A stretch of 63,811 nt of DNA, the filler included, from Octopus bimaculoides (Eukaryota), in the NCBI RefSeq assembly GCF_001194135.2. It is 6 parts of 6 records of this genome, joined end to end, with 100 filler letters (N's around TTAATTAATTAA, not from the genome) between each part and the next. Parts side by side here need not be neighbours in the genome. Positions count along the whole stretch, not along the records: positions 8,909 to 31,935 come from NC_068984.1; 5 more parts are not named here. One strand, written 5' to 3'. Within the stretch, counting starts at the first letter, position 1; every line of letters begins with the position of its first letter. A program made the translations under genes and the position numbers. The notes under the pieces were generated by a model. It was not told the DNA's origin. It saw only the letters and a program-made list of their open reading frames with translations, and made no database searches. Positions 9,910 through 31,575 of the stretch are shown piece after piece.

Positions 9910-10767
9910 NNNNNNNNNNNNNNNNNNNNNNNNNNNNNNNNNNNNNNNNNNNNNNNNNNNNNNNNNNNNNNNNNNNNNNNNNNNNNNNNNNNNNNNNNNN
10001 NNNNNNNNNNNNNNNNNNNNNNNNNNNNNNNNNNNNNNNNNNNNNNNNNNNNNNNNNNNNNNNNNNNNNNNNNNNNNNNNNNNNNNNNNNNNNNNNNNNN
10101 NNNNNNNNNNNNNNNNNNNNNNNNNNNNNNNNNNNNNNNNNNNNNNNNNNNNNNNNNNNNNNNNNNNNNNNNNNNNNNNNNNNNNNNNNNNNNNNNNNNN
10201 NNNNNNNNNNNNNNNNNNNNNNNNNNNNNNNNTATATATATATATATGTATATGTATGTATCTGAATATGTATATATGACATTTAAGGAAACCAATTGGC
10301 TTGAAGTGGCTAATAAATAAATGAATAAGTGTTTTCAGATATTGATTCCTATTTAAATGTATACCTTTAGGCTGAAGTAGAAGTCTCTACTCCTTCCACA
10401 CTCAATGGATTTTTGTGAGGTCGTTTTCTCCTCTCTTTCGCTTCCCCCTCTCTCTATCTCCATTTCTCTCTCTGTCTACTTGTTTCTTATTTTGTTGACC
10501 ACAACCAGAGGAAAAAGAAAAGCAAACTGACTTTAACCAGAATCACACAAAAAGTATTTCATATTCAATGCTCTGCCAGTCCTACATTTGAATGAATCTA
10601 ATGCCAACAGATGTAACAACCTTCCATAAGCCACCAAGAAAAAACCTCTATGCAGTCGCTCAGTTTGCAAGAAAGAGGAGCCAAATTACCTCAAATCATA
10701 CCGTCTATAATAGAGAAAGATATTATTATGTCTCAAGCTACTGCTATCTAGCACCTTCGGATGATCT

Positions 10768-10842: not shown

Positions 10843-11239
10843 ACCCCTACCACAGCCAGACTACCTCTATTTATATGTCTTGGGAGATCTTACTTCTTCG
10901 CCTGGGGCCGTCGACACAACAGATACTAAAGACATTGTATTTCTAAATTAGTATACAAGAAAAAAGAAAATTGAAAATAGAAGAGACAGAGTCGTCTTGG
11001 CTGGAATGCTCTTAATCTTTTTCCTTCTCCACGAATTACGGTTCTAATTTCTTTCCACACACTCTTTACACATCTTGGATAAATTCTTTTCTACAATCGT
11101 ACAGAAAACCAATCATATATTTTGGGCTCTGCGTGTATGTATGCATTTATGCATGTATGTCTATATGTATATATGCGTGTGCAAGCATGTCTATATATGC
11201 ATGTGTGTGTCTATATGTATGTGTGTCCTAAGTTTGTAT

Positions 11240-11470
11240 ATGTTTGTAAGTGTGCCTGTTTGTCCCCCCTAACATCGCTTGACAATCGATGCTGGTGTGT
11301 TTACGTCCCCGTAACTTAGCGTTTCGGCAAAAGAGACCGATGGAATAAGTACTAGCCTTACAAAGAATAAGTCCTGGGGTCGATTTGCTCGACTAAATGC
11401 GGTGCTCCAGCATGGCCACAGTCAAATGACTGAAACAACTAAAAGAGTAAAAGAAAGTAAAAAGAGTATA
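11240..11470 (+). mobile_element. SINE family B, 3' half
   Basis: GTTTGTCCCCCTAACATCGCTTGACAA...GTAACTTAGCG...AATAAGTCCTGGGGTCGAT...GGTGCTCCAGCATGGCC...GACTGAAACAA with an AAAAGAGT tail. Confidence 0.9.
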
Positions 11471-11534
11471 CATAAAGATACATATATATATGTGTGTGTA
11501 TGTACGTATGTATGTATTTTTGTATGTATGCATG

Positions 11535-12290
11535 TATTACATTTGGCCTCGCAATGAGCTTAAAGAAGACAAAAGTAATGTTCACTCATACACCAGGTAA
11601 ACCCTTTCTTGGCACAAAATTCGTGGCTCTGGACATAATGCGATGGCAAAAGTATATAAGTGACGTTGAAGTCTTCGAATGTAGTCGGTCTGCCTGTACA
11701 AAGTCTCTAATACTTCGGCATCGATTACGGTGGAATGGTCATGTGGTCAGGATGGAAGATAATCAGATCTGAAAGCAATTTCCATAATGGTGAGTTAGCC
11801 TAGGGTAAGAGACCATCGCACAAACTGAAAGTAGAGTACAAGGACTGCATCATGAATACATTGAAGAAGGTAAGAATTTTAGAAAACGGTTGAGAAAACG
11901 TCGTTCTAAATCATTTATCGTGGAGGAAAGCAGTGCATGATGGGAGGAGGAAATTCGAACGAAATCGTATCATGAAAAGCTCAAGAGATATGTTTGAATA
12001 TGCCTGAGTATGCTGGCTCACAACCCATTTCAATAGGTAACGAGTATAGCCGTGTCTGTTTAAGTGAAAATGGCCTTAGAAATATCTTAGAAGCAACAGA
12101 CATGGGGAAGTTGCTATAGTTAACAACTTCCATTTGTCTGTTGTTCCTAAGGCAGATTGAAACGTCATATGAAGGTTCCCTAAAACAATATTGTAACACC
12201 TACTGCAGAGGCGCCCGCCACGTCTATACAAAACAAAAGTCCTTAGCAGGGCTGAAAAGTCACATCCGTACTGCTCATGATGAAGAGAAA
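11535..12290 (+). mobile_element. Decayed RTE-clade LINE, 3' part of ORF
   Basis: FGLAMSLKKTKVM, RHRLRWNGHVVRMEDNQI, WRKAVHDG, and terminal KSLAGLKSHIRTAH (RTE C-terminal zinc-finger-like remnant). Confidence 0.85.
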
Positions 12291-16516: not shown

Positions 16517-16716
16517 NNNNNNNNNNNNNNNNNNNNNNNNNNNNNNNNNNNNNNNNNNNNNNNNNNNNNNNNNNNNNNNNNNNNNNNNNNNNNNNNNNNN
16601 NNNNNNNNNNNNNNNNNNNNNNNNNNNNNNNNNNNNNNNNNNNNNNNNNNNNNNNNNNNNNNNNNNNNNNNNNNNNNNNNNNNNNNNNNNNNNNNNNNNN
16701 NNNNNNNNNNNNNNNN

Positions 16717-17157: not shown

Positions 17158-17198
<41 letters not shown>

Positions 17199-17420
17199 TC
17201 TTTTATTCTTTCATTCGTTTCTGCCATTTGGCTGCTGTCATGCTGGAGCATCGCTGTGTGTGTATGTGCGCGTGTGCGTGACCAGCTTCCATGCAGTTTC
17301 CGCCTACCAAATACGAGCCATTGACTGGGATATTACGAGAAAGCATTTGCTCTATGTGCAGCGCGGTGCGACTGAACCTGAAATCACGTCGTTGCGAAGA
17401 GATCTTCTTCACCACACAGC
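16975..17420 (-). mobile_element. Degenerate SINE family B pieces
   Basis: Tail modules at ~16975-17120 and ~17200-17255. Degenerate head at ~17290-17420. Confidence 0.65.
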
Positions 17421-17555: not shown

Positions 17556-17786
17556 ATTATTTCTTTACTACCCACAAGGGGCTACACACAGAGGGGACAA
17601 ACAAGGACAGACAAACGGATTAAGTCGATTATATCGACCCCGGTACGTAACTGGTACTTATTTAATCGACACCGAAAGGATGAAAGGCAAAGTCGACCTC
17701 GGCGGAATTTGAACTCAGAACGTAGCGGCAGACGAAATACCGCTAAGCATTTCGCCCGGCATGCTAACGTTTCTGCCAGCTTGCCT
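17556..17786 (-). mobile_element. SINE family A, near full length
   Basis: Closely matches 55329-55551. Other family A copies at ~20810-21018 (-), ~21410-21635 (-), ~24085-24240 (+), ~26195-26295 (+), ~29085-29303 (-), ~30850-31045 (+) and ~38460-38615 (+). Confidence 0.9.
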
Positions 17787-17788
17787 TC

Positions 17789-18131
17789 GAATTTGTTTCC
17801 TCATAACTTTCAGAAAAATGGTCATCTACATGTTTATCTACAAATACCTTTGAGATAGTGTAGAATACGATTATATCGGAAGTTAATGTCAAAACAAAAT
17901 GAAGGTCGCGAGCACATATATACTGATATACATCATATATTATCTACAAAATGAAACTAGAAATTTTGAAAAGAATTATGTGATGTGTATCACTATGTAT
18001 GTATGCATGCCCACTAATGATTTTTCCTCACAAAAATTCTGATATAATTGTAATCTGAACCATCTGAAAGATATTTATAGGAAATTCATTAAATTATACC
18101 AATCTTCTGAAAATTACGAGGAAACAAAATC
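17789..18131. mobile_element. MITE-like segment with ~30-bp inverted ends
   Basis: TTTGTTTCCTCATAACTTTCAGAAAAATGGT vs reverse complement of the right end TTTGTTTCCTCGTAATTTTCAGAAGATTGGT. Confidence 0.55.
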
Positions 18132-19772: not shown

Positions 19773-19927
19773 CCTAACAAACAAACAAAGACAAGTAACT
19801 GAAACAGTAGTTGTTATTCATAGAAGCATGAGAGATAAATAACTGTGATACATAAGAAATATACTGAAGTTAGTAATATATTGAAATTAGCTATTCGCGA
19901 CAGAAGCAGCCTTTATAACGAATATTA

Positions 19928-20446
19928 GCACATGCAACCTAACCCGGATGTGCTGTTTATAACGCTGTAGACTGCGGTAAATGTCCCAAGACATCGTCTC
20001 ACGTACTAAAAAGCACAAATTTTATCGGTCGACGAAATTTTGTCAGCACCAGTGGATGGCGCTGTTGTTTCATGAGATTTCACCGTAATTTGTGATTCAT
20101 CAGCAATAGGTAGCCAGACACCGAATACCAGATCGAAAATCAGTCAAACAGATATAGTTTAACACTGTCTAAACAGTTAGTGATGTCACGAAAAGCTGAA
20201 GTGTGATGTATCAATTAGCTATTAGCAACAGTTGCTGCCTTTGTATTGACTGCCTTTTACCCAAGATCCGCAATTTAGAGTGCAATCACAAGATTTAACA
20301 GTGCCATCCATGATGCTGACGAAATATCGTCAAACGATATTAACTATGCTTTTCGAGCGTTTGTAGTCTACGCGAGATAATTTCTCGAGGCGTTTACCGC
20401 AGTCTACGGCGTTATAAACAGCACACACAAATTAGGTTGGATATGC
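19928..20446. mobile_element. PIF/Harbinger (Tourist)-like MITE
   Basis: ~80-bp imperfect TIRs (core GTGCTGTTTATAACGCYGTAGACTGCGGTAAA). TTA flanks both ends (19925-27, 20447-49), matching the TWA target duplication of this superfamily. Confidence 0.65.
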
Positions 20447-22149
20447 TTATTAATTGTGTTAATATATTTACTGTAAAGAACTTTAAGAAGTTAATTAGAA
20501 ATCTATACTCGTTTAAGCAACACAGTATTAGTCAACCACAAACGGTAATTATTTTAAATTATTTTGACAAGTTCAAAAGAAAAAAAAAACTTTCACCGGT
20601 GAATTCCATGTTTCACTGACGAAGCCATAATGATATCGAAACATGATTGGAGGTGTCATCCTTACTTAATGAAATTTATTAAGATTATATTAATCAACAT
20701 TAATATTGTTTCGTTTTTCTTTCACCGTATTATTATTTTTTTTCGGTCTTTTTTAATGTTCTCTATATTTTTGCTAGCATTAATTCAACTATGATAAATA
20801 AGTAGTTTAAAATTCTGCCACCAGACCAGCAACTTTTAGTGAGAAGGGGTTTAGACGATTACATCGACTCCAGTAAATGACTATTACCTTATCGACCGCG
20901 AAAGGTTGAAAGGCAAAGTTGATCAAAGTGGAATTTGAAACCAAAACGTAAAGAGCCGGAAGAAATTCTATAAGAAATTTGTCCGATACGTTAACGATTC
21001 TGGCAGCTCACCACCTTAATGATGATAAATAATGCCAAATGTTAAATGTATTGTATTATAAGCAAGGTGGTCACGTTGATAAGATAGCGGATAACAAACT
21101 GACAGGTTCACAATTCGGGTTAGATATTAGTATCTATGGCCATGACACTCAACTCGTACTACTAGTTCTTAAAGACACCTGGAGCAATTCGGTTGTAAAT
21201 TAATTGATTTCAAAAATAGACAAAAGACCAGGTCAGGACGGAAGTAACTCCAATACTTGACTGATACTTATTTTATCGACCTCTAAAAGAAAGAACGAAG
21301 GTAAGATTAACTTCGATGGGATCTGAACTGAAGAACTTAAAGTGACACAAATAAATGTCCCAAGGCATCCTTCTCGGTGCTCTTCCGATTCTGCTTATAA
21401 TAAATGATTTAAAAATTGTGACACAAGATCACCAGTTTAAGGGAGGGGCGAAGTTGATTACATCGACCCCAATGTTCAACTGGTACTTATTTTATCCCCA
21501 CCCTCACCCCAACGAAAGACAAAAGAAAAAAAAACGAGAAACAAAGAATTTGAACTCAAACCTAAAGAGCCGATAGAAATACTGTATAGTATATTGTCCG
21601 ACTTGCTAACGATTCTATCACCTCGTCACCTTAATTACCTCAATCACAAATAAGTTACAAGTTATTGCCGATTTTAACGCTTCGAAGTCGCTGGCACTTG
21701 TTTGACAGTGAAAAACACTGAACATTTCGACGAAGGTAAAGATCTAATCTTGTCAAAAAAAAAGAGTTTATAACTCGGTTTTCCATTTCCTGCTGCACTC
21801 AATAAGTCTCATTAATTTTTATGAAATGCATGTTTGACAAAACAGCAAAATTTTAAATCTTTTATAATTTATAATTTAGCTGAATCACTACTAATATCGA
21901 TTGAATAACAATTTCATTCAAAATGGTGCATTTTCTTCTTGTTGTTTGATTTTTTCACTTTAGAGGTATGACTCATGAAAATACTTTACAAGGTTGAAGC
22001 AGAAGCGAAGGTAGAAACTTGATACAGAGTATGTTTGCAAAAATTATTTCCCCAATTGTAATTAAAGTATACATTGTTTCTTTATCACCCAGTGTCTCGC
22101 TGGAAAGTCTGGTTACAATTATTCTGTATTTATGACCGGAAGAACGTCT

Positions 22150-22195
<46 letters not shown>

Positions 22196-22531
22196 NNNNN
22201 NNNNNNNNNNNNNNNNNNNNNNNNNNNNNNNNNNNNNNNNNNNNNNNNNNNNNNNNNNNNNNNNNNNNNNNNNNNNNNNNNNNNNNNNNNNNNNNNNNNN
22301 NNNNNNNNNNNNNNNNNNNNNNNNNNNNNNNNNNNNNNNNNNNNNNNNNNNNNNNNNNNNNNNNNNCATTCAAACCTATCTACTTATCTTTTCTGCGTTT
22401 AACTACCCATCCGTCTATCTATCTAGCAATCCAATCATCTTTCTCTCTCCCTCTCCTTCTGTCTCTCTCTCTTTCTTCCTCCAATTCTCCCTCACTCTTT
22501 CCGCGTTCTCCCACTCTTTCTCTTTCTCTCT

Positions 22532-23787: not shown

Positions 23788-24282
23788 AAGAGGCGCGTGT
23801 GAGCAAAGGCACACATGTTTCCGGTAAATATGTCTTTTGAACGTTTTCAGTTTCCCCGTTATTCACTTCATGTCCCTATATGATTGGCCACCATTGCTAG
23901 AAAGTTTTTAATAAACTAGATACTTAATGTCACTGTTACATGTCACACTCACTTTCTCTTTTTTCCCCCTCTCTTGCTCGCTCTGCTTCTTTTTGACTCC
24001 CTTTTTACCTTTTTTTAAAAATAAATTTCGCCTCCCTCTTTTTATATTCCATATTGTCTCACTTTTTCTCTCTTCTTAATATTCTTTGCGAGCTGGTAGG
24101 AGTTCAAATTCTGCCGAGGTTAACTTTGCCTTTCATCTTTTCGGGGTCGATAAAATAAGTACCAATTGAGTACTGGCATCAATGTAATCGACTTACTCCT
24201 TCCATGAAATTACTGGCCTTGAGCCAAAAGTTGAAACCTATATTCATTGCTTAATTACGGAAATATTAATTTTAATATTAAT

Positions 24283-24450
24283 AGGCGCAGGAGTGGCTGT
24301 GTGGTAAGAAGCTTGCTTACCAACCACATAGTTCCGGGTTCATTCCCACTGCGTGGCATCTTGGGCAAGTATCTTCTACTATAGCCTCGGGCCGACCATA
24401 GCCTTGTGAGTGGATTTGGTAGACGGAAACTGAAAGAAGCCCGTCGTATA
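24283..24450 (+). mobile_element. SINE family B head (tRNA-like plus CORE-like TTGGGCAAGT segment)
   Basis: GGCGCAGGAGTGGCTGTGTGGTAAG...GGTTCATTCCC...TTGGGCAAGT...GAAAGAAGCCCGTCG(TA)n. Similar heads at ~33530-33685 (+), ~3990-4115 (-) and ~62980-63115 (-, degenerate). Confidence 0.9.
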
Positions 24451-26295
24451 TATATATATATATATATATATATAAGCAATGTTAATTCTCTAAATGAAGT
24501 ATTAACAGTAACTGCACGATAAAGTGTAGTATATTGCCACTTAAGTGTGGCTGACCCCTAGGGGTGGATGTTACTGTTGCTTTTAGCCCCAGGAGGACAT
24601 CTCCTCCAGCTGGCTTATCGACACACGACTGTGTCNNNNNNNNNNNNNNNNNNNNNNNNNNNNNNNNNNNNNNNNNNNNNNNNNNNNNNNNNNNNNNNNN
24701 NNNNNNNNNNNNNNNNNNNNNNNNNNNNNNNNNNNNNNNNNNNNNNNNNNNNNNNNNNNNNNNNNNNNNNNNNNNNNNNNNNNNNNNNNNNNNNNNNNNN
24801 NNNNNNNNNNNNNNNNNNNNNNNNNNNNNNNNNNNNNNNNNNNNNNNNNNNNNNNNNNNNNNNNNNNNNNNNNNNNNNNNNNNNNNNNNNNNNNNNNNNN
24901 NNNNNNNNNNNNNNNNNNNNNNNNNNNNNNNNNNNNNNNNNNNNNNNNNNNNNNNNNNNNNNNNNNNNNNNNNNNNNNNNNNNNNNNNNNNNNNNNNNNN
25001 NNNNNNNNNGGCTAAAGAGGACGATAGAATAAGTACTAGGTTTCCAAAGAATAAGTCCTGGGGTCGATTTGCTCGACTAAAGGCGGTGCTCCAGCATGGC
25101 CGCTGTCAAATGACTGAAACAAGTAAGTAAAAAAAAAAAAAGGAAGTAAAATATACAAAACTTCACATTTAGGAGGAGGATCAGTACATTCGATCAAATC
25201 GACCGGAGTTTTTAACAGACACTCATTCTATCAAGCCCAGAACGTTGAAAACCACAGTTGACTGTAAAGGAATTCGAAATCAGAACATTATTTATTTATT
25301 TGTTTGTTTGTTATTTAATCACTTTTTCCTAAATGGAAAATATGATCTTCAACTATTTGATATATTCAGATTGCTTTTTAGTAACCTCCTGTGCCTTACC
25401 CTATATCGAATCCATTTTTCTCAGCCCACTTTCAGCTGTTCTATGCCAGATATCTCTAGTCATCCAAGTGCTTCCAGGTGTTTATCTTGAAGCAACTTTT
25501 TGTATCTTGTTCCGGTCCATTCTGTGAGCTATGAAATCAGAAATTTCACTAAACAGCAAAATTTTTTGTCATTGAACAGGTTGCAGTTTCGAGCAACGAA
25601 AATTTTGACACTGTATAACAAATAAATGTTTAAATGAAGTTGCCAGCCTTTGTGTGTTTCTGAATGGCTAACTTATGTTTTCTATGCTGCATTCGCTTTA
25701 GTTTTAGAACAAAATCTCAGATCAAAACACTTGCTATACAAATACATCTCCATGAATAAATACTGCAAGGCATACATAGTCTGCTATTCCACGGATTCTA
25801 CAGATCCACCGCCTGTTTCCCACTTGCAGATATCAATGATTATTTTCGAATCAAGTACATATGTAAGAAACCAACCAAAGAAACCTTCACGCCTATGTTT
25901 ACCATCTTCTAGGCCTCATTATAATTCTGAATGTTCTGTGAAGATCTTTTGCTTTTGAAATATTTGATAAAATGTAAAACGTTCATGAACATGTTATGCA
26001 ATATGATTGGTATTTTAATTTATTTGCCCAGAAAGGATGAAGCACTAAATTGATCTTTATGGGATTTGAACTCTGAACCTAAAGTTGCGATTAAATACCC
26101 GCAAACGCAAGTCTGATGCTCTAACGATTCTCCGAATCGACCAAAAGAGTTGAGGTGGGGTATTGATTTGTCAGACAGAATTGAGATGGCAGATCTTTAA
26201 ATTCCGCCGAGGTCGACTTTGCCTTTCATCCTTTCGGGGTAGATAAATGAAGTACCAGTCACGTCCTGGGGTCGATCTAATCGACTACCCTCCCC

Positions 26296-26499
26296 CCGGC
26301 CCAAATATTCTATCTGTTGTATGTTCAAACTGACCGGATCCAAGTTTTCACAGCTACCCTAGAATATTATTCTAGAAATAAACAATCACATTATTGAACT
26401 CAAAGCCATGATATAATGCATGATTAATTCAAAATGATGTAAACAAATAACCAATACATTTGATGGTTTGATGGAGTAATCTGAATGCTAAAGGGTTAA
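26296..26499. mobile_element. piggyBac-like MITE, one end
   Basis: Ends ...TGAATGCTAAAGGG|TTAA (CCC-type TIR plus TTAA target). A related end is seen at ~3020-3240. Confidence 0.5.
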
Positions 26500-26709: not shown

Positions 26710-27107
26710 CACACACACGCGCGTTATTAATGATTGCTTTCACACACATTCTACTCTGCATCTCACTCGCTTTACACCGCTTCTCTAAGTCTTGCTAATC
26801 GTTCCTCGCTCCTCGCCCTTCGCCCTANNNNNNNNNNNNNNNNNNNNNNNNNNNNNNNNNNNNNNNNNNNNNNNNNNNNNNNNNNNNNNNNNNNNNNNNN
26901 NNNNNNNNNNNNNNNNNNNNNNNNNNNNNNNNNNNNNNNNNNNNNNNNNNNNNNNNNNNNNNNNNNNNNNNNNNNNNNNNNNNNNNNNNNNNNNNNNNNN
27001 NNNNNNNNNNATAAGGAGGTAGAGAGAGACAGAGAGAGAAGAGCGAGAGAAAGGTAATGTAAATATATATTTGTATTGTTTATATAAACATGTATGCACA
27101 TACATAA

Positions 27108-27176
<69 letters not shown>

Positions 27177-27184
27177 AAGAGATT

Positions 27185-27223
<39 letters not shown>

Positions 27224-27248
27224 GATGCACACACACTCATACATACAA

Positions 27249-27283
<35 letters not shown>

Positions 27284-27518
27284 CACACACAAACCTACAA
27301 CACACAAACATACATCACACATATACACAAATACATATTTATGTATACCTATGAGCCTTTTAACTGAGTATGTATGCTCCTAAGAAGATAATCTCATGTT
27401 GAGGATTTTGATGTAGTCTTCCCTCATTAGAGAGTTTCATCAAGATAAGTATAAAAACTGTCCATTCTTTGGCACAGTTGTCTGTCCCAGGCACTTTTAT
27501 AACTTTTATAATCAATAT

Positions 27519-27613
27519 TTCGACTGCACGTATTCTAAAATTGGAACGGTACAGAGAAAATTAGCATGGCTCCTGCGCAAGAATGACATGCAAATTCGTG
27601 AAGCGATCCACAT
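27519..27613 (+). pseudogene. U6 snRNA retro-pseudogene
   Basis: 95 nt collinear with U6 from position ~9. I count about 11 mismatches to the vertebrate U6 sequence as recalled. ACAGAGA box and AGC triad are retained. It lacks the first ~8 nt and the oligo-T terminator. Confidence 0.9.
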
Positions 27614-27674
27614 CAGCGGTGCTACAGCATAGTCACAGCCTTAGGGCTGACAAATATAAAAGAATAAAAGAATA
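27614..27674 (+). mobile_element. SINE family B 3' tail fused to the U6 copy
   Basis: CAGCGGTGCTACAGCATAGTCACAG...AAAAGAATAAAAGAATA vs family tail AGGCGGTGCTCCAGCATGGCCGCAG...AAAAGAATAAAAGA. Confidence 0.75.
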
Positions 27675-27954
27675 CTGAGTGCCTCCTAGATTGGAGATGC
27701 ATCTTACGCCGTGCTTAAACCATAGAGAGCTTATGAAGTTGAGAAATATCTCCGTCTCCTCTTTGGAATATCACTCTATAGTCATTTGTTTTTGGTGCTG
27801 ATGTTGTTTAACTCTAGGTCAGCTTTCATAGAGCAGAAATATCAATGTTTTTTATAAAATTATCAAATACCTACAATTCGATGGAAATTTGGCTTTTATT
27901 TCTAGCGGAAAAGGAGGTTCTTTTTGCTGGCACGTCCTACAACAGATTTTATTC

Positions 27955-28385
27955 TTTCATTCTTTTTCTTGTTTCAGTCATTTGACTGTGTCCATGCTGG
28001 AGCACAGCCTTGAAGGGTCTTAGTCAAAGAAATCGGCGTCAGGGTTTATTCTTTGTAAGTGTAGTACTTATTTTATCGGTCTCTTTTGCCGAACTGCTAG
28101 GTTACGAGGACGTAAAAATACCAACATATCAACATTGGTTGTCAAGCGATGATGGGGGACAAACACAGATACAAAGACACACACACACACACACGCATAT
28201 ATACGCATGTGTATGTGTATACGCCAGGCTTCTTTCAGTTTCCGTCTACCAAATCAACTCACAAGACTGGTCAGCCCGAGGCTATAGTAGAAGACACTTG
28301 CCCAAGGTTTCACGCAATGGAATTGAACCCGGAGCCATGTGGTTGAGAAACAAGCTTCTTATCACAAAGCCACGCCTACGCCTAT
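27955..28385 (-). mobile_element. Full-length SINE family B (head, internal microsatellite, tail)
   Basis: Both halves are present around an internal (CA/TA)n. Other copies or halves at ~25010-25130 (+), ~32280-32545 (-), ~35125-35340 (-), ~36405-36780 (-), ~48162-48400 (+), ~60172-60335 (+) and ~63370-63600 (-). Confidence 0.9.
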
Positions 28386-30479
28386 GCAGGTTTAAATTCA
28401 ACAAAGTAAATTCACAAAGCACTAATCAATTATTCAAAGTTAGCATGAATATTAAATTTGGGCATCACTGCAGAGCTTGTATAGCTTGATAGCAAGTACC
28501 ATGTTTTCATTACTTTTGGTGCCTGTGGGTCGCGAGCAGACATAGATACCTCCTCCATCTCTCATTCTTGACCCAGCAGACTGGCCTCCAAAATGTGACG
28601 ACAAGAGTGACAGATGTCTACACCAGTTCCCAGTCTAAGAATTGAACCTTCGGCACCATGACTGTAAGCTGAACACCCTAACAACTAGGCCATGAGCTTT
28701 CATAATTTCCCTAATTAGAGTGGTTATACTTCACATTCCATATGCTTATTTACTGCTTGGATGTTGTTGTTATTGTTTTTGTTGTTGTTGTTGTTGTGGT
28801 TGTTGGTGTTGTTGATGATGATGATGATGATGATGATGATGACGATGATGTACTTATTTAACCCCTACGTCAAAACTGCCTGAGAAAACATTTGATGAAA
28901 TGCGTTCTATCTCATCCTGTGGTTTTGTATCCCTAAAACTAGATTAACAAACGTGTCCTGCCATTTTTTAAGTAACTCCAGTTGCGATCCTCTTCTTCAG
29001 GATATCTAAAACTATTTTTATCTACAGACTCCTTGGCTCATTTAAGACGGCAGTGTAATTTATTTAAGAGAGAGATTTGGCTTATGTTCATTTCAAATTT
29101 TGGCACAAGGGCAGCAATTTCGGGGGAAGGGGTGAGTCGATTACATCGACCCCAGGGATTAACCGGTACTTATTTTATCGACGTCGAAAGGATGACAGGC
29201 AAAGTCGACTTAGGCGGAATTTGAGCTCAGAACGCAAATACGGACGAAATACCGCTAAGTATTTTTCCCAGCCTGCTAATGATGTCGACAGCTTGCCACC
29301 TTAGATTTGGCTCATACTGATACCAGTTCAAACGATTTCGTTCAATTGCTTGCTTGTTTACTTCTAGGTATAGACTCCAGATGAGAGGGCAGCGATATTC
29401 AAAACGAAATAATGTCGCGTCAGTAACACGATACGAATCGTTAACTCAACCAAATCGATAAGTGAACACTATGACGAATTGATCAAATGTAAATATCACT
29501 CACTGTCCTCTGGTTTTCAAGTTCCATTATGTAGTAACTCACGTTGCAACAGTGTGATTTGCCGTTGCCGACGTCTCGTATTTAAAATGAATGAAAACGA
29601 AAATACAATAGGGTTGCTTGTCGCTAGTCTACCCTTGGGTGAGTCGACTGTCTATCACTATATCAACAAAATATGTTTAGAGTTTAATTTTAGTTTCGAT
29701 ACGCATATTACTGTATAGAAGCTCATATTCACAATAAATTTAACTTATGGTGCTAAGTAGTTACGCTATTTATAATTGAAATTGGGTTCTATTTGATAAA
29801 GATGTTAGATCACGTCACACACTAGCTTTCAATGGAAATATGACAGTATTTATATAAGGTGTGAGCTTTCTGGAGCACTGAGGCGTTAAATTAACTGTTA
29901 CAAGGTGTTTTAGCTAAATATATCTCACTTGAATAAAATAGATTTATGTGGAACTATAAAATGAAGTTAAATCTGATAAAATCAGAACCAGCTCAAAGAT
30001 GCGTATATGGTTTATATATGTATATATATATATATATATATATNNNNNNNNNNNNNNNNNNNNNNNNNNNNNNNNNNNNNNNNNNATATATATAGTTATA
30101 CACACACATGCATACACAACACATATACACACACACATATATAATACTATATGTATTTATAGTTTAATATATATTACGCAACATATATTTATGTCTATAT
30201 ATGTATATAAATATTTATCTATCTATCATCTCGATTATCTATCTAGCTAGTTAGCTATATATATGTGTAGAAAGTGAGGTCGGCACTGGATGGGTGCCTC
30301 ACAATTCCTTACATAAACTCGGAAGGAAAATAGCGGAACAAGAATATCTAAACAAATAACAATATTTATTTTCCGTCTGTACAAACGTTACATTTTGGGA
30401 CAATCAGTAGCCAGGTCGCCTTGGTGTGGAAGCAGCAGAATCGGTTTAATCACAATTGTGAAGGCATTCTTCACAGGTT

Positions 30480-30815: not shown

Positions 30816-31575
30816 AGTATATATTTGTATTAGTTATGTATCTATGCGTAGAATTGTTAACGCGTTGGACAAATGTTTAGCGGCATTTCTTCTGACTCTT
30901 TATATCCTGAATTCAAATTCTGAGTTCAACTTAACAGTTCAGCCTTTTGGAGTCGATAAAATAAAGTACTAGTCTAGTACTGGGATCAATGTAATCGACT
31001 GACCCCTTTCTCCAAAAATTGTTGGAGTTGTCTCAATATTAGAAAGAATATTAAAAAGAAGCAACAATAACATAGCTTTTCACAAGTAATGCCTAGTTCT
31101 TCAATTTTATATTAGCTATAATATTGATAACTACCAATGACTCGACTATGAAGATCAATATATTATTGCAATTGTTTCATGAATGGTGCAGGTAGAAATC
31201 GTGAATTGACTACATTTAGGTGTGAGCTTTCTGGAAAGAAATGTAGTAAAAACTAAGATTAGTAAATACCATAATGCATTTAGTTCATCGCTTCACCATA
31301 TATATTAAAACATTGCTGTCAGGATGAAAATTATTAATACTATTATTGAGCCTCGGCTCACTACAAACAGCGGCCAAATCACTTGCAAATTTAACTGTAC
31401 TGACGTAAAAAGAACACAACGGACATATTGGATAATTTTGTTTGACCAGAGTGTTTCTGGTCAAAAGAACAATAAAAATAGCTGCAGCAGCAATAGCAAA
31501 AGCAACGACAACTGCAGCCGTTGCTGTTGTTGTACTTTGTGTTATTCTATCCATTAATCGTAGAATTGGCAGGTC

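What the first reader, a model, noticed from the sequence alone, without database searches (positions are those of the whole stretch)
27519..27674. U6 snRNA / SINE-tail chimeric retrocopy
A nearly full U6 copy stops just before its U-rich 3' end and continues without spacer into the last ~60 nt of SINE family B, including its AAAAGAAT tail. This is the architecture of U6/LINE or U6/SINE chimeras attributed to template switching or RNA ligation during target-primed reverse transcription, best known in mammals. I am not aware of a description in cephalopods. If the same junction is multicopy, it would be a U6-headed SINE family instead of a one-off.
Basis: partly seen in the sequence, partly recalled or inferred. 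Interest (0 to 1): 0.72.

Follow-up and report, generated by a model that had tools for sequence, protein, structure and literature searches.

The report
Decayed U6 copy fused to SINE tail
A decayed, end-trimmed copy of the U6 spliceosomal RNA is joined directly to the last 58 bases of a local tRNA-derived SINE. This is the known signature of a retrotransposon enzyme copying two RNAs into one insertion, so it is a new example of a known process, not a new kind of element.

Summary
Window 27519-27613 (+) matches positions 9-103 of the 107-nt U6 snRNA, 84/95 identical with no indel. Rfam U6 scores 74.5 bits, E 1.8e-17. The first 8 nt and the terminal T-run are missing. After two bases (CA) comes 27616-27673. 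This is the 58-nt 3' module of a tRNA-derived SINE whose tail occurs four more times in the 23-kb piece (BLAST E 2e-7 to 8e-6 for the three reported copies; 46/58 to their consensus). The module has two small hairpins and ends in (AAAAGAAT)2. Both flanks are unique in the piece.

The best reading is one chimeric retrocopy. A LINE reverse transcriptase started on a tail-bearing RNA, switched to U6 RNA and stopped 8 nt short of its 5' end.

The decisive tests could not be run. There is no target-site duplication of 5 nt or more, but full-length copies of this SINE lack one too. No collection held this genome, so junction copy number and the empty site remain untested.

U6 chimeras with L2, RTE and their SINEs are already described in platypus and lizard. 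This is therefore a new member of a known kind, possibly the first noted in a mollusc. I could not verify the organism. Interest is modest.

The parts
27519..27613 (+). U6 snRNA-derived segment, U6 positions 9-103 of 107. It is 5'-truncated by 8 nt and lacks the terminal U/T run. The ACAGAGA box and the AGC triad are intact, but the 5' stem-loop is destroyed.
   Evidence: Rfam U6, 74.5 bits, E 1.8e-17. Pairwise alignment 84/95 identical, no indel, 11 substitutions of which 8 are transitions.
27614..27615 (+). Junction dinucleotide CA, of unassigned origin. It is neither U6 (where T is expected) nor the SINE body (where AG, AT or GG is seen). The other tail-only unit, at 17253 (-), is also preceded by CA, there as part of a (CA)n run.
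   Evidence: Alignment of the five tails with their upstream sequence; sequence.
27616..27633 (+). Tail hairpin 1 (GCGGUGCU ACAG CAUAGU). The tail module starts at its base.
   Evidence: MFE fold of the tail gives the same two-hairpin shape in three of the four tails folded.
27636..27649 (+). Tail hairpin 2 (CAGCC UUAG GGCUG), a 5-bp stem. Relative to the majority form CAGUC AAAU GACUG it carries a U-A to C-G compensatory change.
   Evidence: RNAalifold: 5 pairs, one with both sides changed in 2 of 5 sequences, this copy and 17196-17254 (-); fold.
27650..27673 (+). A-rich 3' end of the tail, ACAAATAT followed by (AAAAGAAT)2. This is the authentic 3' terminus of the SINE family.
   Evidence: The same terminal 8-mer repeats are seen at 11440-11455 (+), 27950-27965 (-) and 17196-17211 (-).
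27330..27518 (.). Upstream flank. It is unique in the piece and holds no SINE head or body, and there is no TATA box at -30 from the would-be U6 start.
   Evidence: BLASTN of the flank against the piece gives only microsatellite noise, E 0.14 or worse; sequence read.
27674..27949 (.). Downstream flank. No repeat family was found in it. Its only matches (E 0.005 or weaker) fall in a T/G-rich simple stretch at 27786-27810, and no duplicate of the upstream flank is present.
   Evidence: The longest shared word between the two flanks is AATA.

Best explanation
This is a single, old, dead-on-arrival chimeric retrocopy.

The proposed sequence of events is inferred, not shown. A LINE reverse transcriptase of the stringent type, one that recognises a structured 3' end rather than poly(A), began target-primed reverse transcription on an RNA carrying the 58-nt tail. 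That tail has two hairpins plus AAAAGAAT repeats and is shared with the local tRNA-derived SINE. After copying the tail the enzyme left that template at or 2 nt beyond the tail's 5' boundary. It continued on U6 snRNA, entering just inside the terminal U-run, and ended 8 nt before the U6 5' end.

The product (U6 positions 9-103, then CA, then the tail) was integrated as one piece. It has since drifted neutrally, 12% in the U6 part and about 20% in the tail. It has no promoter, no terminator and no intact U6 5' stem, so it is not a U6 gene.

What is shown: the two homologies, their orientation, the exact junction, the truncations and the unique flanks.
For: The first 8 nt match at 1 of 8 sites while the rest is 88% identical. 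At the observed 11.6% divergence, 7 or more mismatches out of 8 have a probability of about 2e-6 (my arithmetic). The 5' end is therefore truly missing, as expected from incomplete reverse transcription and not from a decayed gene.

Tail homology is significant (nhmmer finds exactly five tails). The tail runs to the family's own 3' terminus.

Both parts have the same orientation with a spacer of 0-2 nt. With four other tails in 23 kb, about 9e-5 per base per strand, a chance abutment within 2 nt is of order 3e-4 per U6 fragment (my estimate).

No SINE body or head lies upstream of U6. This excludes insertion of U6 into a pre-existing full SINE.

The tail has the build of a stringent LINE recognition end: two hairpins, one with a compensatory change, plus short tandem repeats. 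With such LINEs a cellular RNA can be retrotransposed only if it acquires that tail (argument in PMC4476161).

The divergence of the two halves is not significantly different: 11/95 against 12/58. The Fisher test there, run with 13/58, gave p = 0.11; with 12/58 the difference is smaller still.

In platypus the published U6-L2 chimeras are almost all 5'-truncated U6 on a short L2 piece, and TSDs of only 1-9 bp were found for 72.5% of the 40 chimeras.
Against: No TSD of 5 nt or more was found; only AATA is shared, and 3 of its 4 nt belong to the tail. Simultaneous insertion is therefore unproven. The full-length SINE copies at 28398-27950 (-) and 24290-25125 (+) show no convincing TSD either, so this test has little power here.

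The tail looks somewhat more diverged than the U6 part (79% against 88% identity).

A second tail-only unit with the same 5' boundary exists at 17253-17196 (-). Tail-only pieces therefore do occur on their own in this genome.

The LINE partner carrying this tail was not found in the piece. The organism and the copy number of the junction are unknown.

The choice between template switching and RNA ligation rests on one feature only, the absence of the T-run.
Confidence: 0.72

Rival explanations
1. Two separate events. A U6 processed pseudogene, 3'-truncated or having lost its T-run, was already present. A 5'-truncated, tail-only copy of the SINE or of its LINE partner later inserted right at its 3' end, or the events came in the reverse order.
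For: Tail-only units exist independently: 17253-17196 (-) sits between microsatellite runs inside another SINE copy. No TSD brackets the whole unit. The tail is nominally more diverged than U6.
Against: This reading needs abutment to within 0-2 nt in the same orientation, of order 3e-4 by chance at the tail density seen in the piece (my estimate). No poly(A) or A-rich stretch follows U6, although a stand-alone U6 retrocopy made by a poly(A)-dependent LINE would have one. Where stringent LINEs are the active ones, as in platypus, no U6 copies with poly(A) or 3' truncation were detected (PMC4476161).
Confidence: 0.12
2. This locus is a daughter copy of a multicopy U6-headed SINE. A master U6 gene lost its T-run terminator and acquired the LINE-type tail. 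It is transcribed from its external Pol III promoter through the tail, and its transcripts are retrotransposed repeatedly with one fixed junction.
For: The junction removes exactly the U6 terminator, so transcription from a master gene would read through the tail. There is no run of four or more T inside 27519-27673. The tail starts exactly at the module boundary, at the base of hairpin 1. SINEs with snRNA heads exist (SINEU, with U1 or U2 heads; PMC4494074). The giant squid genome has about 1,300 U2-derived loci thought to be SINE-like (PMC6962438).
Against: There is only one copy in 23 kb, against five tails and 7-8 copies of another SINE. The copy is 5'-truncated. In the animals studied the U6 promoter is external (vertebrates: PMC4494074), so daughters cannot re-amplify. 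The searchable collections hold no second junction, but they do not hold this genome, so that result is uninformative.
Confidence: 0.08
3. This is not a retrotransposition product. It would then be a DNA-level join (end-joining with captured filler DNA, or a deletion between a U6 pseudogene and a downstream SINE) or an assembly artefact.
For: The assembly is gappy, with many N runs next to microsatellites. No TSD was found.
Against: The junction lies inside an uninterrupted stretch, about 27011 to 30040 without N. A deletion would have to end exactly at the U6 U-run on one side and at the base of tail hairpin 1 on the other. The missing 8 nt at the U6 5' end also point to reverse transcription.
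Confidence: 0.05

Closest known systems
U6-L2 and U6-Mon-1 chimeras of platypus; U6-L2, U6-RTE and U6-AnolisSINE2 chimeras of Anolis (Doucet et al. 2015, PMC4476161)
   Same: U6 in sense orientation is fused directly to the 3' piece of a stringent-type LINE or of its SINE. In platypus U6-L2 chimeras the U6 is usually 5'-truncated and the 3' piece is short. The 3' end is a short tandem repeat rather than poly(A). TSDs are absent or very short.
   Different: The tail sequence is different, with (AAAAGAAT)n instead of (TGAA)n. The U6 U-run is completely absent. A single locus was seen here, against 40 chimeras in platypus.
Human and other mammalian U6/L1 chimeric pseudogenes (Buzdin 2002; Garcia-Perez 2007; Moldovan et al. 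2019, PMC6789731)
   Same: The overall architecture is the same, U6 followed by a 5'-truncated retrotransposon 3' end, mobilised by a LINE enzyme.
   Different: In human U6/L1 chimeras the U6 is full length and ends in 4-8 T. The genomic copies examined ended in 5-7 T, had TSDs of 6-19 bp and sat in an L1 endonuclease site. They arise by RtcB ligation of U6 carrying a 2',3'-cyclic phosphate. Here there is no T-run, no TSD, no poly(A), and the U6 is 5'-truncated. The U6-derived ORFs found by chance in the protein database all continue with F, FF or FL, which is the T-run, after ...KRS(I/T) or its variant KHST in one of them. Two of them run into what I recognise from memory as L1 ORF2.
SINEU, SINEs with U1 or U2 snRNA-derived heads in crocodilians (Kojima 2015, PMC4494074)
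   Same: An snRNA-derived 5' part is joined to a retrotransposable 3' part. Template switching is the proposed origin of the heads.
   Different: SINEU are multicopy families with subfamilies and master copies, and their heads are U1 or U2 (Pol II snRNAs). No U6-headed SINE turned up in my literature searches. Multicopy status is untested here.
Tripartite and bipartite chimeric retrogenes of Magnaporthe grisea (Gogvadze et al. 2007, PMC2104539)
   Same: They show that LINE-mediated chimeras of cellular RNA with a LINE 3' end occur outside vertebrates.
   Different: The host is a fungus, the LINE is different, and the 5' partner is not U6-to-SINE. I saw only the abstract.

Membership tests
U6/retrotransposon chimeric retropseudogene (Group IV snRNA pseudogene of Doucet 2015) | U6 sequence in sense orientation abutting, at its 3' end, a retrotransposon sequence in the same orientation | tested here: met
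   U6 at 27519-27613 (+) and tail at 27616-27673 (+), with a 2-nt CA between them.
U6/retrotransposon chimeric retropseudogene (Group IV snRNA pseudogene of Doucet 2015) | The 3' partner is a 5'-truncated LINE or SINE that keeps the element's authentic 3' terminus | tested here: met
   Only the last 58 nt of the SINE are present. They end in (AAAAGAAT)2 as in the copies at 11455, 27950 and 17196.
U6/retrotransposon chimeric retropseudogene (Group IV snRNA pseudogene of Doucet 2015) | A target-site duplication brackets the whole chimera | tested here: inconclusive
   There is no shared word of 5 nt or more between the flanks, only AATA overlapping the tail. Two full-length SINE copies also lack a clear TSD. 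Platypus U6 chimeras have TSDs of 1-9 bp in only 72.5% of cases.
U6/retrotransposon chimeric retropseudogene (Group IV snRNA pseudogene of Doucet 2015) | Both halves arrived in one event (orthologous empty site, or contemporaneous presence or absence) | not testable with these tools
   No collection available here holds this genome or a relative.
RtcB-ligated U6/L1-type chimera (Moldovan 2019) | U6 is full length and ends in its oligo-U run (4-8 T in DNA) at the junction | tested here: not met
   U6 stops at position 103 (...CCACAT) and no T follows. The 5' 8 nt are also missing. Feature taken from PMC6789731.
snRNA-headed SINE (SINEU-like) | Many dispersed copies share the same head-to-tail junction | not testable with these tools
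   One copy in the 23-kb piece. External scans were empty, but the same scans also failed to find the abundant SINE tail, so they do not cover this genome.
snRNA-headed SINE (SINEU-like) | The 5' part is derived from an snRNA and the 3' part can be recognised by a LINE enzyme | tested here: met
   The U6 head; a tail shared with a tRNA-derived SINE, with conserved hairpins and terminal repeats.
Functional U6 snRNA gene | Intact 5' stem-loop, a T-run terminator, and an upstream TATA box near -30 | tested here: not met
   The Rfam alignment marks the 5' stem pairs as non-canonical. Positions 1-8 are absent and there is no T-run. The sequence 27481-27490 has no TATA; TATA-like words lie only at about -15 to -9 and across the would-be start at 27511.
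   Only the tail is present at this locus. The head (A box TGGCTGTGTGG, B box GGTTCAATCCC) and the body are absent from the upstream flank. The locus holds a fragment of the family, not a member copy.

The most novel reading that the evidence does not exclude
The 58-nt tail (two hairpins plus AAAAGAAT repeats) is a discrete mobile cassette with a fixed 5' boundary that is repeatedly joined to unrelated RNAs. Two of the five tails in this 23-kb piece are tail-only units starting at the same nucleotide. One follows U6; the other sits inside the internal microsatellite of another SINE copy. Both are preceded by CA and both carry the same compensatory C-G pair in hairpin 2. If so, the U6-tail junction would be one of many identical copies, that is, a U6-headed SINE fed by a terminator-less master U6 gene. 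That would be the first SINE with a U6 head.
Probability: 0.08. Interest if true: 0.6.

Novelty: new member of a known kind. Interest (0 to 1): 0.3.

Why it matters
If the source is indeed a cephalopod or another mollusc, this locus extends U6/retrotransposon chimeras from vertebrates and fungi to another phylum, and to another stringent LINE-SINE pair. That supports the view that joining a LINE tail to small RNAs is a general by-product of non-LTR retrotransposition and the route by which new SINEs are born.

The missing U-run is a small mechanistic hint in favour of template switching over ligation in this system.

On its own, one decayed copy changes little. The value lies in the cheap genome-wide follow-up it suggests.

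Tried and rejected
(1) Copy number of the junction by DNA pattern (GTGAAGCGNTCCANATN{0,12}TGCTNCAGCAT). There were 0 hits in metagenome contigs and genome contigs. The single hit in viral contigs (L001) is a chance match with no recognisable U6 sequence and no Rfam match. A control pattern from the abundant SINE tail also found nothing in all three collections. These collections simply do not contain this genome, so the negatives carry no weight.

(2) Copy number by protein. The open frame across the junction, padded to 47 aa and paired with an inferred ancestral form, found only six U6-derived ORFs with T-runs and none with the tail. A 159-aa ORF over the SINE and a conceptual LINE fragment found nothing. 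This closed the route to related contigs.

(3) Exact look-ups of three window ORFs, meant to identify the source record, all came back not on record.

(4) Literature look-up of SINE sequence strings found no paper. The octopus genome paper is not held.

(5) U6 inserted into a pre-existing full SINE: rejected, because the upstream flank has no SINE head or body. An early MAFFT alignment had suggested a weak resemblance of 27479-27495 to the start of the SINE body, but BLAST does not support it.

(6) A functional U6 gene or variant: rejected, see the membership test.

(7) The Rfam sub-threshold hits (mir-297, mir-466, mir-3149 and others) all lie on microsatellites and are artefacts.

(8) A closer kinship of this tail to the other tail-only unit is not supported by overall identity, 72% against 77% to the copy at 11399. 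Only the shared C-G pair and the shared boundary link them.

Full report
**What is there**

Rfam finds one family above threshold in the 23-kb piece. It is U6 at 27511-27617 (+), 74.5 bits against a gathering score of 44, E 1.8e-17. A permissive re-scan adds only microsatellite artefacts.

It gives 84/95 identities, no indel and 11 substitutions, 8 of them transitions.

The 8 nt where U6 positions 1-8 should lie match at 1 of 8 sites (read). At 12% divergence this is not decay but absence. The terminal T-run is also absent. The 5' stem-loop cannot form, and there is no TATA box near -30. This is a dead, 5'- and 3'-trimmed U6 copy, not a gene.

**The tail**

BLASTN of 27500-27720 against the piece finds 27616-27672/4 at 11399-11455 (+), 17196-17260 (-) and 27950-28008 (-), with E between 1.8e-7 and 7.7e-6. 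A profile of the tails finds exactly five in the piece, the fifth at about 25083-25131 (+).

Three of the five are the 3' ends of a long SINE. That SINE consists of:
- a tRNA-like head, with A box TGGCTGTGTGG and B box GGTTCAATCCC;
- an internal (CA)n(TA)n(TG)n microsatellite;
- a body of about 170 nt;
- the 58-nt tail.

The tail at the finding is 46/58 identical to the consensus of the others. It ends, like them, in (AAAAGAAT)2.

Three of the four tails folded form two small hairpins followed by the unpaired A-rich repeats; the fourth, at 17196-17253 (-), forms weaker versions. Hairpin 2 has a U-A to C-G compensatory change in two of the five sequences. This is the build of the 3' end that stringent LINEs such as L2 recognise (background in PMC4476161).

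**The junction**

The sequence reads ...GAAGCGATCCACAT | CA | GCGGTGCTACAGCAT.... U6 ends one base before its U-run would begin. The tail begins at the base of hairpin 1. The dinucleotide CA belongs to neither.

Both flanks, 27330-27518 and 27675-27949, belong to no repeat family in the piece. Their only matches are microsatellite or simple-sequence noise. U6 therefore did not land inside a full SINE.

**How it most likely arose**

A stand-alone U6 retrocopy needs a poly(A)-dependent LINE and would carry an A-tract; there is none. With a stringent LINE, a cellular RNA can be copied into the genome only if it is attached to the LINE-type tail. Here U6 is attached to exactly that tail, in the same orientation, with no real spacer.

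At the tail density seen in the piece, an accidental abutment within 2 nt is of order 3e-4 (my estimate). I therefore read the locus as one chimeric cDNA. It was primed on the tail, continued on U6 RNA and ended 8 nt short of the U6 5' end.

The divergence of the two halves is compatible with one age: 11/95 against 12/58. The Fisher test there, run with 13/58, gave p = 0.11.

Of the two mechanisms on offer, template switching fits better. RtcB-ligated human U6/L1 junctions keep 4-8 T (PMC6789731). The six U6-derived ORFs that my protein search happened to retrieve also all run into the T-run. This copy has no T at all.

**What remains unproven**

There is no TSD of 5 nt or more. Two full-length copies of the SINE have none either, and only short TSDs of 1-9 bp were found for 72.5% of the 40 platypus U6 chimeras. 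The test is weak here.

I could not reach the source genome or any relative:
- Junction and SINE-tail patterns found nothing relevant in the metagenome, prokaryote-genome and viral collections.
- Three protein searches and three exact look-ups gave no way in.

The copy number of the junction, the empty site and the organism are therefore untested. From memory, the two SINE families in the piece look like the abundant octopus SINEs, but no tool confirmed this.

**A detail worth keeping**

A second tail-only unit lies at 17253-17196 (-). It starts at the same nucleotide (GCGATGCT), is also preceded by CA, and shares the C-G pair in hairpin 2. It sits between the (CA)n and (TG)n halves of the internal microsatellite of a SINE copy whose body (17159-16975) lacks its own tail.

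Two tail-only units with one boundary in 23 kb suggest one of three things: a preferred stop or switch point at the base of hairpin 1, a discrete tail RNA, or a short SINE subfamily. This keeps alive, at low probability, the reading that U6-tail is a multicopy family.

**Comparison with what is known**

U6 chimeras are not confined to L1. Doucet et al. 2015 describe U6-L2 and U6-Mon-1 in platypus. In Anolis they describe U6-L1, U6-L2, U6-RTE and U6-AnolisSINE2, and they note candidates in opossum and turkey. Gogvadze et al. 2007 describe LINE-mediated chimeras in a fungus.

SINEs with snRNA heads (U1 or U2) exist in crocodilians. The giant squid genome has about 1,300 U2-derived loci. My searches found no report of a U6/SINE chimera or a U6-headed SINE in molluscs, but that library is incomplete.

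**Verdict**

It is a new member of a known kind and of modest interest, unless the junction proves to be multicopy.

Noticed in passing
window 17470-16975 (-): An odd SINE locus. It reads tRNA-like head, (CA)n, a 58-nt tail-only unit (17253-17196), (TG)n/(TA)n, and then a SINE body (17159-16975) that lacks its own tail and ends in an A-rich stretch. The tail sits in the middle of the element instead of at its end, and it starts at the same nucleotide as the tail behind U6.
   Followed up: partly
window 28398-27950 (-), 24268-25131 (+, assembly gap inside), 11206-11462 (+): Copies of the tRNA-derived SINE that owns the tail. It has a head of about 165 nt (A box TGGCTGTGTGG, B box GGTTCAATCCC), an internal palindromic microsatellite (CA)n(TA)n(TG)n, a body of about 170 nt and a 58-nt tail. 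ARAGORN and Rfam do not call the head as tRNA.
   Followed up: partly
window 27636-27649 and 17233-17220 (-): Hairpin 2 of the tail carries a U-A to C-G compensatory change in two of the five tails. This argues that the hairpin is functional, as a recognition element for the partner LINE.
   Followed up: partly
window 17612-17785 (+), 20806-21018 (+), 21413-21502 (+), 29091-29303 (+), 24100-24237 (-), 26196-26298 (-), 30850-31045 (-): A second, unrelated SINE-like family occurs 7-8 times at 70-89% identity (GTCGATTACATCGACCCC...GGAATTTGAACTCAGAAC). It is denser in the piece than the family that owns the tail.
   Followed up: no
window 11494-11990 (+): A degenerate open frame with stops and a frameshift. 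To my eye it resembles the C-terminal end of a LINE ORF2 (...RLRWNGHVVRMEDNQI...GELA.GKRP...YKD...W...A.D...WR). Pfam and the protein database gave no hit, so this rests on recollection only. It does not end in the 58-nt tail.
   Followed up: partly
window 17789-18131 and 19924-20450: Two foldback elements that match their own reverse complement over their whole length. One is 343 bp at 71% identity. The other is 527 bp, with terminal arms of 82 nt at 79% identity. They are MITE-like or hairpin elements.
   Followed up: partly
window 9910-10230, 16519-16716, 22196-22370, 24636-25005, 26829-27010, 30044-30085 (approximate): Assembly gaps (N runs) almost always sit next to long microsatellites. 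The sub-threshold Rfam 'miRNA' hits (mir-297, mir-466, mir-3149) lie on such repeats and are artefacts.
   Followed up: no
proteins P0003 and P0004: The junction-peptide search retrieved ORFs from ENA contigs in which a U6 copy with its T-run runs into sequence I recognise from memory as mammalian L1 ORF2. These look like ordinary U6/L1 chimeras. They are a convenient contrast to the T-less junction here.
   Followed up: no
L001 1697-1735 (+): This is the only external hit to the junction pattern. It is a chance match in an IMG/VR contig, with no recognisable U6 sequence and no Rfam match.
   Followed up: yes
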